Counted from the first letter of the stretch, positions 4,957-39,944 are shown. The stretch: DNA of 64,000 nt from Isurus oxyrinchus (GCA_026770705.1 JANJGN010000121.1:744001-808000), one strand, 5' to 3'. The notes: generated by a model from the sequence alone, not told the origin. Program-made: numbers and translations.

Positions 4957-5325
4957 TTGGACTGTCACAAGAGTGGAAAGGTGACACTCCACGAGAGGTG
5001 ACAGCGCAGGAAGGTTCGTGTGTACAGATTCCATGTCATTACAGTTATCCATCGTGTCTGGAAAACCAACCGCGAGGTGGAGTCTGGTTTAATAATGAGG
5101 AACAGATTCCCTGGGCTCCCATTGCCTTTCACTCCAAGGATCACAGTCATGAGTTACCACGTTTCCACAATCGGACCCGGCTGTCTGGAGACCTGAAACA
5201 TGGCGACTGTTCCCTGATTATAAACAACATCAGACGGGAAGATGCAGGACCTTATTTTTTCAGAATAGAATTTGACAATGGTCCGAGCCATAACTATTAC
5301 CCTGTAACCCAGCTTCACGTTTCTG
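4957..5325 (+). CDS. Gene A V-set exon V2 (Siglec-type, 'acidic' C-C' type)
   Basis: Acceptor ccccag, donor G/GTAAGT, phase 1-1, open frame, motifs GSCVQIPC, GDCSL and YFFRIE. Confidence 0.92.
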
Positions 5326-6053
5326 GTAAGTGCTGTGTTATAATTACTCATTAATTCACATCCAACACTCAATGGGAAATAACACAAACTGTGACGTTTA
5401 CATATTAACACAAAACACAGCTTATTATAACACACTGTCTGATTCTCAATAACCTGGTGATAGCTTCCAGTTCAGTCCTAAAGCAACCTCTAATACTCAC
5501 TTTAATGACAATGATTAAATGTATTGACTGTGTCCATCAATGTTATCAGGTTATCCACTCCCATCGATCTCTCTAATCCTGTCTTGAAGTCTGACATATC
5601 GACAGAAGAAAGATTCACATTTCTGTAGCACCTTTCACCACCTCACCACGGACGAAATCACTTCACAGCCAATGAGCTGATTCCTGAATTGTAGTTACTG
5701 TTGTAATGTGAGAAACACAGCAGCCAATTTGTGCACAGCAAGCTCCCACAAATTGCAAAGTAATAAATGGCCCAGATTGCTGAGTGAATGATGGGGTAGT
5801 GCACTCCAAACTCTGGTCTGCTCCTTCACCCTCACCCACTATTATCAGTTCAAGTGTCTCGGAGTGAACGTGTATTAAGCTGAGAGACAGAAATACCAAA
5901 GTCTCAAAGCAGGAAATTCTCTCCTGATCATTGTAATCTCTCAGATCTGATATCATCCTTGTAAAAGTGCTTTTTCTTGTGGGACTGTGATTTCTATTTG
6001 AACTGATGCTTCACGTTATATTTCTCTAAAAGGATCCATTCTCTGTCTGTTAG

Positions 6054-6350
6054 ATTTCACAGATAAACCCACGATATTCCCTGCTGAAATTATTGCAGGA
6101 AAGCGTGTGGATGTAAGCTGCACCTTCAACACAACGTGCAATGGAACAGCAGCACCTGTCTTAACCTGGGACACTCCCACTGACGTACGTGGATCAGTCT
6201 CAAACACTGTAACTCAGCATGGTGTCAGTCTGACCTATACTTCTGTTCTGACCCTGATCCCATCACTCAAACACCACGGACACACTCTCAGCTGCAGAGT
6301 GAGATATCCATCTGTTTCATCGGAGCGGACCCTCGTACTAACTGTGCAAG
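6054..6350 (+). CDS. Gene A C2-set Ig exon (Siglec domain 2)
   Basis: Acceptor ctgtctgttag, donor G/GTAAGT, phase 1-1. Encodes DFTDKPTIFPAEIIAGKRVDVSCTFNTTCNGTAAPVLTW...HHGHTLSCRVRYP...LTVQ, with the extra Cys typical of Siglec D2. Confidence 0.92.
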
Positions 6351-6673
6351 GTAAGTACGGACACCCTTCATTCTACATCAGCACTCCCTCAGCGCTGACC
6401 CTCTGACAGTGCAGCCTGTTCTCAGTATCCACATTCTCATGCCTCTCAAAGTGCTTCACAGTCGATAGAAGTTAACTGATCTTTATTTGATTGTTGCTGA
6501 ATGAAGAGACAAGCTGTCTAAACTTTACATCTCACACACATTATTTTCCATGGCAACACCTCCTCCAATCAGTGACCACTTGCTGATTAACCAGCACTCT
6601 CTTCCCTTTGAATATAAATTGTTGTTCACTTTCTGTTGGTAAACCTGCAATCTGTCTTGTTGAGTCCGGTCCT

Positions 6674-6825
6674 GACATCTGAATATTACAATGAACAGAA
6701 CAAGTTCCAACAATGAGCTGTGGTTGGTGATTCCTCACGTTACATCCAGGGACACTGGAGACTATCAGTGTGCTCAGAGAATGAACATGGAGCAGTGGAG
6801 GGGTTCATAACCATCACTGTGGAAC
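6674..6825 (+). pseudogene. Gene A remnant of C2 domain-3 exon (5' half and acceptor lost, 1-nt deletion)
   Basis: Nearly identical to 30590-30742, but has cagtgtgctcagagaat instead of cagtgtgtggcagagaat (frameshift), and upstream homology is absent. Confidence 0.85.
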
Positions 6826-37061: not shown

Positions 37062-37092
<31 letters not shown>

Positions 37093-38054
37093 CCTCTCTC
37101 TCTCGCTCTCTCCCTCTCTCTCTCTCTCTCTCCCTGTCTCTGTCTTTCTTTCTGTGTCTGTCTCTCATTCCCTATCTCCAGCTCCTCCTTTAAGATGCCC
37201 GTTAATAACTGACTTTGTTGACTCAGCTGTTGGTCTCCTGTCCCTAATATCTCCTCATGTGCCTCAGAGTCAGGTGAAGATGTCACTAACAATCCCCGGA
37301 TGAGCCTTAGGACATTTTGCTACATTGAAGGTGCTATATAAATGCCAGTGGTTGTAGTAACTCTGATCTGCTTCGATTAACAATAGAACCACAAAGGCTC
37401 CTTCGACAGGGGGTGTGTGCAGCAGGGTCACAATAAATACATTGAGCTGTGAGATTTTTAATTCTTTCATCGAATGTGTCTGTCACTGGTGATGTCAGCA
37501 TTAATGCCCATCCCTAATTGCCCTTGAGAAGGTGGTGGGGAGCTGCCTTCTTGACCCGCTGCGGTCCATGTGGTGTAGGTACACCCAAAGTGCTGTTAGA
37601 GAGGGAGTTCCAGGATTTTGACCCAGCGACAGTGAAGGAACGGTGATATATTTCCAAGTCAGGATGGTGAGTGACTTGGAGGGGAACTTCCAGGTGGTGG
37701 TGTTCCCATGTGTCTGCTGCCCTTGTCCTTCTAGATGGTAGAGGTCGTGGGTTTGGAAGGTGCTGTTGAAGGAGCCTTGCTGAGTTGCTGCAGTGCATCT
37801 TGTAGATGGTACACACACTGCTTCCACTGTGTGTTCATGGTGGAGGGAGTGAATGTTTAATGTGGTGGATGGGGTGTCGATCAATCGGGCTGCTTTGTCC
37901 TGGATGGTGTCAAGCTTCTTGATTCTGTGCTTTGTGCAGAAGTGATTTAAAGAGACAGTCCAGTTGTCGGTGTAAGGTTACAGTGGGCTCTGTGTCTGTG
38001 CTACACTGACTCTCTGCTATATGATAACCACAGTGTCATATTGTGTTATCGCAG

Positions 38055-38136
38055 GAGAAAGACAGCGATGGAGGAGAGAGTTTCAGGGACCAGTGACATT
38101 GCATTGACCCCCAGTCCACTCTCTGTGAAACACCAG
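38055..38136 (+). CDS. Gene B juxtamembrane cytoplasmic exon, cassette b
   Basis: Duplicate of 35134-35215 with intact splice sites. Encodes RKTAMEERVSGTSDIALTPSPLSVKHQ. Confidence 0.8.
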
Positions 38137-39695
38137 GTACAGGAGCTGTTTACACTCACTCCAAAGCTTCAATCTCAGTGTGTAGACAACACATGTCACA
38201 GATTCCCAGCCCAGTTACCCACTGATTTGTATCTGTGGAGTCAGCAATGGTTCAGTATCATGCTGTCTCTCTGTTATGACACAGAAACTGGTAAAGGCTG
38301 TTGTTTAAAATCCCAGAGGGAAACTTTAAACAATGTCATAACCTATATTTCCCAGTGGAATGTTTGAGATGCAGCTCTAAATTCAGGAATAAGACCACCA
38401 GTTCTTGAGATGGTTTTATATCAAACTACTTGAGACATATATTAATTTACACAAGTTAAACATATGCACATGGCTACAAACTAGTATTATCATAAATTTT
38501 TAACAAATTCTCAAACTAATCTCCTCTAAGACAACCCATTATCTTTAAGCAGACACCCAGGCAAAGCATTTTCACCTCACAAATTCCAAATGAGGTTCCT
38601 TTCACTTTGGTTCCTTTGCAGACAAGTGTAGGCTTACAGCTGCTTTGCTGTTACAAGCGTCTGCTCTGCACACACAAAACTGCTCAAGTTATACCCAGCT
38701 CTTGAGTGTAAAGAAGACGGAGATTGATGGGCTCTTGATTGGTCAGGGGATCAAAGGTTAGGAGAGAAGGTGGGAGAATGGGGTTTGTGAAACATATCAG
38801 CCATGTATGAATGGTGGAGCAGACTCGATGGACCGAATGGTCTAATTTCTCCTCCTATATCTGATGGTCTTATGGCTTCTGTTTGAAGGTAAATTCACAA
38901 TGTATCATCAGGACCTTTGAACTCCATCTCTTCCAATAATAAATCCCCGTTCATTGTATCAATTTTATTAGTAATATAAACGTTGATTGGTTTAAGATTT
39001 CACTCTCAGACTTTGAATGTTTTATTTAAAAATGCAAATTACCACTTTACCTCTTTGTTTACATCTCAAAACTACTATACATCAAAGCACCCAGACTGGC
39101 TGGCTTTAATCCAATTAAAATACACACAGACACACACACAGACTAAACCTCTGTTTAAAAAGACAGTTTGCATTTATAATACAAACATTAATAGATTAAT
39201 AACACTCTGTCTCTGTCCCTCCTCTCTCCCTCTCTCTCATCCTCTCTCTGATTACAAGGTTCATGTTATTGAGCCTCACACCAGGCACCTGTGTGCAGAT
39301 TCCAAGCCATCACTCACCAGAGCCATTACCGAGGGAGTGCTGCACTGTTGGAGGGTCAGTACTGAGGGAGTGCTGCACTGTTGGAGGGTCAGTACTGAGG
39401 GAGTGCTGCACTGACAGAGGGTCAGTACTGAGGGAGCGCTGTATTGTCGGAGGGTCAGCACTGAGGGAGTGCTGCACTGTCAGAGGGTCAGTATTGAGGG
39501 AGTGCTGCACTGTTGGAGTGTGATAGAGATTAAATTATAAAGAGAGAGAGAAAGCGAGAGAGACAGAGAAAGAGAGTGAAAAAAAGGGTTAAACCCACTG
39601 AGACACGACTGACACTAATGAGGCTGCACAATAATTTAACCCTATCAGTACCAGTAATTGATGTGAGGATATCTTCTGTTTCCATTTCTCTGTAG

Positions 39696-39944
39696 GGTAA
39701 ACAGAACGTGCTGATTACTGAGCCCCGGAACACAACCAGAGACACAACTAGTGAGGGGGAGACCCCAGCTCCCCGGGATCTCTCTGAAGGTCCAGTGGGA
39801 GGCGATGTTGGACATGGGAACCCCGACAATCCCGCCGAGCTTCTCTACGCCAACATCAACTTTTCAAAGCTGCCCAGCGGTGACAGGACTGTGCACAGGA
39901 GCGAGGACACGGAATACGCACAGATCAGGTTCCAGAAAAACTGA
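39696..39944 (+). CDS. Gene B terminal exon, cassette b (ITIM LLYANI + ITSM-like TEYAQI)
   Basis: Acceptor tttctctgtag, phase 0. Encodes GKQNVLITEP...AELLYANINFSKL...DTEYAQIRFQKN*, a typical Siglec two-tyrosine tail. Confidence 0.88.
   Translation, partial: GKQNVLITEPRNTTRDTTSEGETPAPRDLSEGPVGGDVGHGNPDNPAELLYANINFSKLPSGDRTVHRSEDTEYAQIRFQKN

What the first reader, a model, noticed from the sequence alone, without database searches (positions are those of the whole stretch)
4957..39944. Paired activating/inhibitory Siglec-like receptors with near-identical ligand-binding domains
Seen: by manual alignment, gene A V2 differs from gene B V5 at only 5 residues after the signal remnant, and the D2 domains also differ at about 5 residues. 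Gene A ends in a TM with Arg and a short Tyr-free tail, whereas gene B has a neutral TM and ITIM/ITSM tails. Established: this is the architecture of primate Siglec-5/Siglec-14 and Siglec-11/Siglec-16 pairs, which are thought to counter pathogens exploiting inhibitory Siglecs. Inference: an independently evolved Siglec pair in a probable chondrichthyan, built on a MAG-like scaffold.
Basis: partly seen in the sequence, partly recalled or inferred. Interest (0 to 1): 0.85.

Follow-up and report, generated by a model that had tools for sequence, protein, structure and literature searches.

The report
Shark activating/inhibitory Siglec-like gene pair
Two neighbouring shark immune-receptor genes of the sialic-acid-lectin (Siglec) type share almost identical outer domains, but one ends in an "activating" membrane anchor and the other in "inhibitory" tails; this is the paired-receptor design known from primates, here in a family that automatic annotation already lists in other sharks.

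Summary
V2 (4957-5325) and V5 (24569-24937) differ at 5 residues after the first two, and the two D2 exons also differ at 5.

Gene A ends in exon 7947-8086, which encodes a membrane span with an Arg and a 12-residue Tyr-free tail. Gene B has a neutral span and two ITIM/ITSM-type tail cassettes.

The predicted splice 6350>7947 and the V2>D2 splice 5325>6054 occur with GT..AG ends in contigs of four runs from four studies and two organisms. Those contigs are only 95-99.6% like the window.

The V exons are Siglec V-set domains. Siglec-5 is the best solved match, and the essential Arg is aligned.

- Both genes probably carry more V exons in tandem: V1-V2 in A, and leader-V3-V4-V5 in B. The outermost V exons are only 79% alike, and V3 lacks the Arg.
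- The Arg span is an old cassette shared by white shark, catsharks and bamboo shark.
- Related genes are already auto-annotated as Siglec-12/14/CD33-like in RefSeq.

This scan has reported the same Arg exon at other places of this genome. The gap 29775-29926 lies in an intronic AC microsatellite. Adaptor and ligand binding are untested.

The parts
1066..1443 (+). V1: V-set exon of the 'basic' class. It is probably the first Ig exon of gene A. It keeps the essential Arg (YFFRIE). Its donor is GC, not GT.
   Evidence: V-set 1.3e-12, Ig_CD22 1.1e-9. Tandem use is inferred from white-shark models P0170, P0168 and P0162. It was not shown for this locus.
4957..5325 (+). V2: V-set exon of gene A, phase 1-1, with the essential Arg.
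   Evidence: Siglec-5, 5.7e-16. The splice 5325>6054 is seen in contigs of 4 runs. It is 96.7% identical to P0170 of Carcharodon.
6054..6350 (+). D2A: C2-set exon of gene A.
   Evidence: (C2-set_2, 2.1e-9).
6676..6830 (+). Relic of a D3 exon in gene A. Its 5' half and acceptor are missing and it has a 1-nt frameshift. The splice 6350>7947 skips it.
   Evidence: Contigs laid here carry the extra base of the intact D3, so they come from D3-bearing genes.
7947..8086 (+). Last coding exon of gene A: stalk, membrane span with Arg (ILGIRAV), a 12-residue Tyr-free tail and the stop codon. The 3' UTR follows.
   Evidence: Splice 6350>7947 with GT..AG ends in X1, X5, X6 and X7. It is 95.6% identical to the C-termini of P0170 and P0168 and 81-84% identical to those of catshark and bamboo-shark proteins.
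12193..12232 (+). Leader exon of gene B (MIGKSYFLLSLLQ, phase-1 donor GTAATA).
   Evidence: It is 100% identical to the N-termini of many annotated shark family members. The upstream out-of-frame ATG matches the N-terminus of P0013.
17515..17892 (+). V3: V-set exon of the V1 class in gene B. The essential Arg is replaced by Thr (YFFTIK).
   Evidence: 79% identical to V1.
21084..21452 (+). V4: V-set exon of the V2 class in gene B. It belongs to an extra tandem unit of about 3.5 kb.
   Evidence: 91% identical to V2, 93% to V5.
24569..24937 (+). V5: V-set exon of gene B and counterpart of V2.
25750..26046 (+). D2B: C2-set exon of gene B.
29775..29926 (.). Assembly gap inside the D2B-D3B intron, flanked by AC microsatellite.
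   Evidence: I did not fill it.
30461..30742 (+). D3B: I-set/C2 exon of gene B.
   Evidence: the best Siglec match is MAG domain 4, 1.6e-15.
32735..33028 (+). D4B: membrane-proximal Ig exon of gene B.
   Evidence: MAG domain 5, 5.8e-11; 95.8% identical to P0155.
34315..34411 (+). Membrane exon of gene B, with no charged residue in the span.
   Evidence: It matches ...GRDSSKWTVGLLTAGIMLSVFLAGIFIFICVRK of P0155 and P0166.
35134..35215 (+). Cytoplasmic exon 1 of gene B (RKTAMEERVSGTSDIALSPSSLSVKHQ).
36616..36864 (+). Tail exon 1: FLYANP (not a canonical ITIM) and TEYAQI (ITSM-type), then a stop. An internal donor after 36848 could carry the transcript on into cassette 2.
   Evidence: Models P0166 and P0171 join the two cassettes at this point.
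38055..38136 (+). Duplicate of cytoplasmic exon 1 (cassette 2).
   Evidence: (34522-35783 matches 37445-38703 at 95%).
39696..39944 (+). Tail exon 2: LLYANI (canonical ITIM) and TEYAQI (ITSM-type), then a stop.
   Evidence: 90% identical to the tail of Cetorhinus P0002.

Best explanation
**What it is.** The stretch holds two head-to-tail genes of a large Siglec-like receptor family of elasmobranchs. The genome is that of a lamniform-like shark.

**Gene A** is of the activating type. Its Ig part is V2-D2, most likely preceded by V1 and by a leader that lies outside the window. That part is spliced directly to an exon encoding a membrane span with a buried Arg and a 12-residue tail without Tyr.

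**Gene B** is of the inhibitory type. It runs leader, then V5 (most likely preceded by V3 and V4), D2, D3, D4, a neutral span and cytoplasmic cassettes with ITIM- and ITSM-type tyrosines.

**How the similarity arose.** The inner V and D2 exons are about 96% alike. The cause is a shared block duplication (dS about 0.05), apparently followed by patchy sequence exchange between the copies.

**Inferred working, not tested here.**
- Both proteins see the same or overlapping sialylated ligands.
- B recruits SHP-type phosphatases through its phosphorylated tyrosines.
- A pairs through its Arg with an Asp-bearing ITAM adaptor (FcR-gamma- or DAP12-like) and gives the opposite signal.
- A microbe that engages the inhibitory receptor would then also trip the activating one.

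**Shown:** the exons, motifs, splices, homology and mosaic identity. **Inferred:** tandem use of V1, V3 and V4 at this locus, lectin activity, adaptor coupling and the counter-pathogen role.
For: - **Residue counts and motifs:**
- **Siglec identity of the V exons.** They pass V-set and Ig_CD22 cut-offs. The alignment to Siglec-5 places the Arg of YFFRIE on the Arg of Siglec-5's YFFRVE, the motif that on established knowledge holds the essential sialic-acid-binding Arg. The CxxxxC and GDCSL cysteines are present.
- **Splices.** 5325>6054 and 6350>7947, both with GT..AG ends, occur in contigs of X1 (organism A) and X5-X7 (organism B), four studies in all. One X7 contig spans V2>D2 with 1 mismatch in 256 nt and carries the gene-A letters.
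- **Annotated relatives.** White-shark RefSeq proteins P0170 and P0168 read V-V-D2-DSGGEILHVIQILGIRAV...KGSRQTV and are 95-97% identical to gene A's exons. P0155 and P0166 show the inhibitory build with the same exon joins as gene B.
- **Old Arg span.** It is conserved at 81-96% identity across Lamniformes, Carcharhiniformes and Orectolobiformes.
- **D2 tree.** D2 domains group by shark lineage, not by signalling type. An AU test rejects a single clade of D2 domains from Arg-span genes (p = 0.023).
- **Mosaic identity between A and B:** 98.9%, 96%, 81%, 98.9%, then 71% (chi-square 180, p = 4e-36).
- **Selection.** dN/dS is 0.34 for V2/V5 and 0.54 for D2, so these exons are under constraint.
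Against: - The laid records are assembly contigs, not reads, and are 95-99.6% like the window. All D2 contigs read C at 6189 and 6228, where the window has G.
- The scan notes several other loci with this Arg exon in the same genome. The transcripts may therefore come from an allele, a sister species or a near-identical paralogue, not from this exact locus.
- The runs are only guessed to be RNA. The GT..AG joints argue that they are.
- Gene A's leader is not in the window. V1 has a GC donor. A decayed D3 exon lies in A's last intron.
- If V1 and V3 are the outermost domains, the likely ligand-binding tips are only 79% alike, and V3 lacks the essential Arg. That weakens the 'same ligand' premise.
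- Tail 1 has no canonical ITIM.
- No binding, adaptor or co-expression data exist.
- I named the group for the AU test after I had seen the tree.
Confidence: 0.65

Rival explanations
1. The likeness is only a by-product of birth-and-death evolution. A and B are two recent tandem copies in a fast-turning multigene cluster that reuses exon cassettes (V classes, D2, D3, two kinds of membrane exon). Their similar V2/V5 and D2 exons reflect recent duplication. There is no selection for shared ligand recognition and no functional coupling.
For: - Homology between A and B covers introns and a LINE fragment, not only exons.
- V4 is yet another copy, 91-93% identical.
- Family members in RefSeq show many exon combinations: 1-4 V domains, with or without D2, D3 or D4.
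- V1 and V3 have diverged strongly: dN 0.109, dN/dS 1.68.
Against: - Identity is a mosaic rather than uniform (p = 4e-36).
- D2 domains of activating and inhibitory genes group by lineage although the Arg span is far older. That pattern needs repeated exchange or repeated re-pairing.
- dN/dS of 0.34-0.54 shows constraint on the shared exons.
Confidence: 0.2
2. Gene A at this locus is a decaying or silent copy. The spliced V2-D2-Arg-span transcripts come from one of the other near-identical activating genes of the genome.
For: - There is no leader in the window. V1 has a GC donor. A broken D3 relic lies in the last intron.
- The contigs differ from the window by 0.4-5%. They never show the window's G at 6189 and 6228.
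- Other Arg-exon loci are noted in the same genome.
- An unchecked scan note proposes that the leader was deleted upstream.
Against: - V1, V2, D2A and the membrane exon have open frames, intact splice sites and all the conserved Cys and Arg residues.
- At the other diagnostic sites (6133, 6327 and the last 24 nt of D2) the contigs carry gene A's letters, not gene B's.
- The leader is expected about 5.3 kb before V1 by analogy with B, which places it beyond the window's edge.
- GC-AG introns are functional.
- The white-shark orthologue also joins D2 directly to this exon.
Confidence: 0.1
3. The V exons are alternatives, not tandem domains. One leader is spliced to one of V3, V4 or V5 (or, in gene A, to V1 or V2). 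Each gene would then yield several single-V receptors, and V2 and V5 would be true N-terminal ligand-binding domains.
For: - Every V exon keeps the same acceptor and a 'signal remnant' start.
- Single-V models exist in the family: P0008, P0181 and P0214 in catsharks, P0194 and P0013 in white shark.
- Another first-reader note proposed this arrangement.
Against: - All V exons are in phase 1-1 and in frame with each other.
- RefSeq models in at least six species carry 2-4 V domains in a row, with exactly the junctions ...LHVS|VGLSQ and ...VS|AEPSQ that tandem splicing of these exons would give.
- One X1 contig reads a V-exon end joined to a V5-type start.
- On my own knowledge, human Siglec-12 is a precedent with two V-set domains.
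Confidence: 0.15

Closest known systems
Primate Siglec-5/Siglec-14 and Siglec-11/Siglec-16 paired receptors (PMC4042635, PMC5701461)
   Same: - The genes are adjacent.
- The first Ig domains are nearly identical, with signs of sequence exchange between the copies.
- One member has ITIM and ITIM-like/ITSM tyrosines.
- The other member has a positively charged residue in the span and a short tail.
   Different: - The shark pair arose separately, in a family whose close relatives found here (E <= 1e-20) are all elasmobranch.
- Identity is 96%, not above 99%.
- Each gene probably carries two or three V-set domains, and the outermost ones have diverged to 79% identity.
- The Arg span is an old, reused cassette shared by three shark orders.
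- The adaptor is unknown.
RefSeq models of white shark (P0170 and P0168 'Siglec-12', P0194 'CD33-like', P0155 'Siglec-13'), basking shark and catsharks (P0181 'Siglec-14')
   Same: - The exon types and junctions are the same.
- Identity is 91-98% per exon for the exons from V2 to the membrane exons. The tail exons are 77-90% identical.
- The Arg span and the ITIM/ITSM tails are the same.
   Different: - These are automatic predictions named after their best mammalian hit.
- No exon is 100% identical to the window, so the window's species or paralogue is another one.
- No paper in the searched library describes them as paired receptors.
Myelin-associated glycoprotein (Siglec-4)
   Same: D3 and D4 find MAG domains 4 and 5 as their best Siglec matches among solved structures. 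The V and D2 exons also match MAG.
   Different: - The V domain scores slightly higher with the CD33-related Siglecs.
- The tail has the CD33-type ITIM + TxYxxI pair.
- The genes form a multi-copy cluster with activating members and extra V domains. MAG is a single conserved five-domain gene.
- Few multi-domain CD33-related ectodomains have been solved, so the structure comparison is biased.
Other paired Ig receptors with an Arg high in the span (KIR, LILR/PIR, PILR; macaque activating KIR use FcR-gamma, PMC8102735)
   Same: An Arg lies in the outer third of the span, the tail is short, and an inhibitory twin exists.
   Different: They belong to different Ig families and bind different ligands. 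The comparison only illustrates that the sequence alone does not name the adaptor.

Membership tests
Siglec (I-type lectin) family | N-terminal V-set Ig domain of the Siglec type | tested here: met
   V1-V5 pass the V-set cut-off (46-50 bits against 26) and the Ig_CD22 cut-off (36-39 bits against 27). The 17 best solved matches are all Siglecs.
Siglec (I-type lectin) family | Essential Arg on the F strand that binds the sialic acid carboxylate | tested here: met
   The Arg of YFFRIE aligns with the Arg of Siglec-5's YFFRVE. It is present in V1, V2, V4 and V5. V3 has Thr instead.
Siglec (I-type lectin) family | Unusual cysteine pattern: an intra-sheet disulfide plus an extra Cys linking domain 1 to domain 2 | tested here: inconclusive
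   The pattern C-x5-C ... GDCSL in V and SC...C...C in D2 is present in the sequence and aligns with Siglec-5. The disulfide pairing itself was not modelled.
Siglec (I-type lectin) family | Binding of sialylated glycans | not testable with these tools
   This needs a glycan array or cell binding with Arg mutants.
CD33-related Siglecs | Cytoplasmic ITIM followed by a membrane-distal ITIM-like/ITSM motif | tested here: met
   Tail 2 has LLYANI plus TEYAQI. Tail 1 has only TEYAQI as a canonical motif, because FLYANP fails the ITIM pattern.
CD33-related Siglecs | Orthology or a shared clade with the mammalian CD33-related cluster | not tested
   I built no tree with tetrapod Siglecs, because no referenced sequences of them were on hand. 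Scores against solved structures do not separate CD33-related Siglecs from MAG for the V domain, and they favour MAG for D3 and D4.
Paired activating/inhibitory receptors (Siglec-5/14 type) | Linked genes with highly similar ligand-binding domains | tested here: inconclusive
   The genes are adjacent and on the same strand. V2/V5 are 94-96% identical and D2 is 95%. The probable outermost V exons, V1 and V3, are only 79% identical. Which V binds ligand is unknown.
Paired activating/inhibitory receptors (Siglec-5/14 type) | One member has a charged residue in the span and a short tail, the other has ITIMs | tested here: met
   The splice to the Arg exon is seen in contigs of 4 runs.
Paired activating/inhibitory receptors (Siglec-5/14 type) | Sequence exchange (gene conversion) keeps the ectodomains alike | tested here: inconclusive
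   Identity is a mosaic (p = 4e-36), and D2 domains group by lineage rather than by type (AU p = 0.023). Both fit gene conversion. I ran no tract test with orthologous loci, and a repeat inside the intron may inflate the contrast.
Paired activating/inhibitory receptors (Siglec-5/14 type) | The activating member associates with an ITAM adaptor through the charged residue | not testable with these tools
The scan note on an FcR-gamma-like gene elsewhere in this genome is unchecked.
Paired activating/inhibitory receptors (Siglec-5/14 type) | Both members are expressed in the same cells | tested here: inconclusive
   Contigs of the Arg exon and of D3-type exons occur in the same runs. The tissues and cell types are unknown, and contigs give no expression levels.

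The most novel reading that the evidence does not exclude
Galeomorph sharks have kept, for well over 100 million years, a Siglec-like paired-receptor system. It is built from exchangeable cassettes: arrays of two classes of V exons, and either an Arg-bearing span or ITIM/ITSM tails. The inner V and D2 exons are repeatedly homogenised between activating and inhibitory neighbours, while the outermost V diversifies, losing its sialic-acid Arg in some copies. If so, the 'decoy' logic of Siglec-5/14 was reached independently near the base of the jawed vertebrates. CD33-type inhibitory Siglec signalling would then not be an innovation of tetrapods.
Probability: 0.4. Interest if true: 0.7.

Novelty: new member of a known kind. 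Interest (0 to 1): 0.55.

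Why it matters
Paired Siglecs are a textbook case of host-pathogen arms races, but they are described only in mammals. Work on fish states that fish genomes lack inhibitory CD33-related Siglecs (PMC7226832, which studied teleosts).

A conserved activating/inhibitory Siglec-like system in sharks would do three things:
- show that the design arises repeatedly;
- give a deep comparative point for how Arg-span cassettes and ITAM adaptors co-evolved;
- offer a natural experiment, in multi-V arrays with diverging outer domains, on how lectin receptors escape exploitation by microbes.

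The practical value is modest. The genes are already in RefSeq under borrowed names, and nothing functional is known about them.

Tried and rejected
- **Leader of gene A.** A scan for ATG + hydrophobic core + phase-1 donor found nothing credible before V1 or V2. The only hit near V1 (513-543) has a twin inside gene B's first intron. The leader is therefore taken to lie outside the window.
- **Transcript-derived ORFs spanning V1>V2.** A protein search with the V1 exon gave only three short RefSeq fragments.
- **Survey of the Arg span by word search.** It returned only four proteins. The wider picture came from pattern matching in the proteins already fetched.
- **Protein-atlas look-up of the Arg-span segment.** Scores were 0.75-0.76, below the noise level, so it was discarded.
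- **Positive selection on V1/V3.** dN/dS is 1.68, but this is not significant against neutrality (p = 0.41) or against V2/V5 (Fisher p = 0.096). It is reported only as a trend.
- **Adaptors in cartilaginous fish.** The literature search turned up nothing usable.
- **Joined protein models.** All searches were done exon by exon by reference, or with natural RefSeq proteins returned by the tools.
- **Complex prediction.** None was run, because no adaptor sequence was on hand.
- **Other limits.** The gap was not filled.

Full report
**1. What is in the stretch**

The window is vertebrate DNA, full of LINE fragments and 33- and 37-bp satellites.
- five closely related V-set exons: V1 1066-1443, V2 4957-5325, V3 17515-17892, V4 21084-21452 and V5 24569-24937;
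- two D2 exons: 6054-6350 and 25750-26046;
- one intact D3 (30461-30742) and a broken D3 relic (6676-6830);
- one D4 (32735-33028);
- three tail exons.

All Ig exons are in phase 1-1 and their lengths are multiples of three.

**2. The observation**

V2 and V5 differ at 13 of 369 nt. That makes 7 residues, of which 5 lie after the first two. D2A and D2B differ at 10 of 297 nt and 5 residues.

Exon 7947-8086 encodes DSGGEILHVILILGIRAVIFLVAVVITIAGVCVWERQTVKGSRQTV*. It has one Arg in the outer third of the span and a tail with no Tyr.

Gene B has these 3' parts:
- a neutral span exon, 34315-34411;
- a short cytoplasmic exon, 35134-35215;
- a tail exon, 36616-36864, with FLYANP and TEYAQI;
- a duplicated cassette, 38055-38136 plus 39696-39944, with a canonical LLYANI and TEYAQI.

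**3. The gap**

The N run 29775-29926 lies in the 4.4-kb D2B-D3B intron. Its flanks are AC-rich microsatellite, and no frame crosses it. Annotated relatives join D2 directly to D3. Some relatives have two or more D3-type domains, so an exon hidden in the gap cannot be excluded. I did not fill it.

**4. Family**

The V exons pass Pfam's cut-offs for V-set and for Ig_CD22, the Siglec first domain. D2 passes C2-set_2.

Against solved structures:
- V2 finds Siglec-5 (5.7e-16), then Siglec-8, Siglec-7, CD33, MAG, Siglec-10 and sialoadhesin. The Arg of YFFRIE aligns with the Arg of Siglec-5's YFFRVE, the motif that holds the essential sialic-acid-binding Arg (established knowledge).
- D2 finds MAG and CD33 about equally.
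- D3 finds MAG domain 4 as its best Siglec match.
- D4 finds MAG domain 5 as its only Siglec match.

So the scaffold is Siglec. It is MAG-like in the membrane-proximal domains and CD33-like in the V domain and the tail. I did not build a tree with tetrapod Siglecs.

**5. Transcript evidence**

I laid contigs of four runs on 3400-8900: X1 (organism A) and X5, X6, X7 (organism B), from four studies. Every run shows two joints with GT..AG ends:
- 5324>6053 (cut +1, that is 5325>6054);
- 6348>7945 (cut +2, that is 6350>7947).

The evidence that these contigs are gene-A-like:
- One X7 contig spans V2>D2 with 1 mismatch in 256 nt.
- At the sites that tell A from B it carries A's letters.
- The 56-nt D2 side of the X5 junction contig lies where A and B differ at 7 of 24 nt, so it too is A-like.

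The caveats:
- These are contigs, only guessed to be RNA, and 95-99.6% like the window.
- All D2 contigs read C at 6189 and 6228, the family consensus Pro and Thr, where the window has G.
- The genome holds other loci with this exon.

What is shown is that a gene of this exact build is transcribed and spliced. That this very copy is the source remains likely but unproven.

**6. Relatives**

A full HMMER scan with V2 and a word search found more than 100 proteins. All the close ones are elasmobranch, from sharks, rays and skates. NCBI's pipeline has named them Siglec-5, -8, -10, -12, -13, -14, CD33-like or MAG-like.

The closest are white-shark proteins:
- P0170: V2 96.7% identical, Arg exon 95.6%.
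- P0168 and P0194.
- P0155: D4 95.8% identical.

No exon is 100% identical to the window. I therefore call the genome lamniform-like and name no species.

Three things follow.

(a) *The leader.* The exon MIGKSYFLLSLLQ that I found at 12193-12232 is identical to the N-termini of many annotated family members. Gene B therefore starts there, about 4 kb after gene A's stop.

(b) *Tandem V domains.* Models in at least six species carry two to four V domains in a row. Their junctions read ...LHVS|VGLSQ... and ...VS|AEPSQ.... Tandem splicing of V1>V2 and V4>V5 would give exactly these. One X1 contig reads TTCACGTTTCTG|CTGAACCC, the end of a V exon joined to a V5-type start. So A is probably V1-V2-D2-TM, and B is probably V3-V4-V5-D2-D3-D4-TM-tails.

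(c) *The Arg span.* Its invariant core ILGIRA occurs in Carcharodon, Scyliorhinus canicula, S. torazame and Chiloscyllium punctatum. It is an old cassette, not a local invention.

**7. How the two genes relate**

Self-BLASTN shows that the block V1-type + V2-type + D2 was duplicated as a whole:
- 2-3188 matches 16467-19641 at 89%;
- 4027-6382 matches 23603-26078 at 93-98%;
- V4 is an extra 3.5-kb unit.

dS is similar for V1/V3 (0.065), V2/V5 (0.053) and D2 (0.047). dN is not: 0.109 for V1/V3 against 0.018 for V2/V5. V1 and V3 are 79% identical, and V3 has Thr for the essential Arg.

Identity between A and B is a mosaic (chi-square 180, p = 4e-36):

| Segment | Identity |
|---|---|
| LINE piece before the V exon | 98.9% |
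| V exon and its flanks | 96% |
| Mid-intron | 81% |
| First 273 nt of D2 | 98.9% |
| Last 24 nt of D2 and beyond | 71% |

In a tree of D2 domains the activating and inhibitory genes group by shark lineage. An AU test rejects a single clade of D2 domains from Arg-span genes (p = 0.023). I named that group after I had seen the tree.

An old Arg cassette combined with lineage-specific ectodomains is the signature of concerted evolution that is known from paired receptors. Repeated duplication with exon shuffling could give the same picture.

**8. Mechanism**

I commit to the paired-receptor reading at about 0.65.
- B is an inhibitory Siglec-like lectin that signals through ITIM/ITSM tyrosines.
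- A is its activating neighbour, which signals through an Asp-bearing ITAM adaptor held by the Arg.

On my own knowledge of LILR, KIR and OSCAR, an Arg in the outer third of the span fits FcR-gamma at least as well as DAP12. Macaque activating KIR are a documented example (PMC8102735). The sequence alone does not decide the adaptor.

White-shark and basking-shark models (P0166, P0171) use a donor inside tail exon 1, which lies after 36848 in the window. It splices on to the second cassette. B may therefore make a short tail or a long tail with four tyrosine motifs.

**9. Novelty**

The searched library holds no paper on Siglec pairs in cartilaginous fish. Work on teleosts states that fish lack CD33-related inhibitory Siglecs (PMC7226832).

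Against that, the genes are already annotated automatically in several sharks. This scan has also reported the same Arg exon at other places of this genome, and follow-up agents reached the same reading there.

I file it as a new member of a known kind, of moderate interest.

**10. Limits**

Searches went exon by exon, or used natural RefSeq proteins returned by the tools.
- Read laying allowed one call, so gene B's splices and the junctions upstream of V2 were not examined.

Noticed in passing
window 11640-11770 (+): An orphan piece, with acceptor and GTAAGT donor, that encodes GSSTGRGHSAQAERVGSSSPGEQSDRSW. This is the first cytoplasmic exon of a different inhibitory subfamily (basking-shark P0184-P0186). 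It lies between gene A's end and gene B's leader. A basking-shark model reads the same two elements in a row.
   Followed up: partly
window 51534-52001 and 61843-62076 (+): A third gene. Its V-set exon is of another class (87% identical to basking-shark P0173). In the window it stops being alignable after ...SDVYY, just before the F-strand motif. A third ITSM-type tail exon (FLYANPQV ... TEYAQIRF) follows. Gaps at 44188-46296 and 62306-62458 lie around it.
   Followed up: partly
window 36848 (and the same motif at 39928): An internal GT donor (ATCAG|GTTCGA) lies inside tail exon 1, just after the TEYAQI motif. White-shark and basking-shark models use the matching site to splice on to the second cassette, which would give a tail with four tyrosine motifs.
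   Followed up: partly
window 1066-1443 against 17515-17892: The outer V exons, V1 and V3, have dN/dS of 1.68 (30 non-synonymous against 5 synonymous changes), while V2/V5 have 0.34 at a similar dS. This is not significant on its own (p = 0.41; Fisher against V2/V5 p = 0.096). V3 has lost the essential Arg and V1 keeps it.
   Followed up: yes
window 1441-1449: V1 has a GC donor (CTG|GCAAGT) where the other four V exons have GTAAGT.
   Followed up: no
window 7977 and 8092-8822: Contigs of organism B read A for T at 7977. This changes Leu to Gln in the span, as in white-shark P0170 and P0168. The same contigs join 8092 to 8822 in the 3' UTR, so the roughly 700-bp stretch with a LINE fragment is absent there: an insertion in the window's genome or a deletion in theirs.
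   Followed up: partly
window 4245-5052 (-), 20336-21179 (-), 23821-24463 (-): LINE reverse-transcriptase fragments abut the acceptors of V2, V4 and V5. They are part of the duplicated unit and are its most similar segment (about 99%).
   Followed up: partly
window 9527-11374, 36252-36470, 39327-39518; also 2699-3200, 19170-20122, 22730-23607, 57823-58826: Two satellite families recur in the introns and spacers of the cluster, one of 33-bp units and one of 37-bp units. They may favour unequal crossing-over.
   Followed up: no
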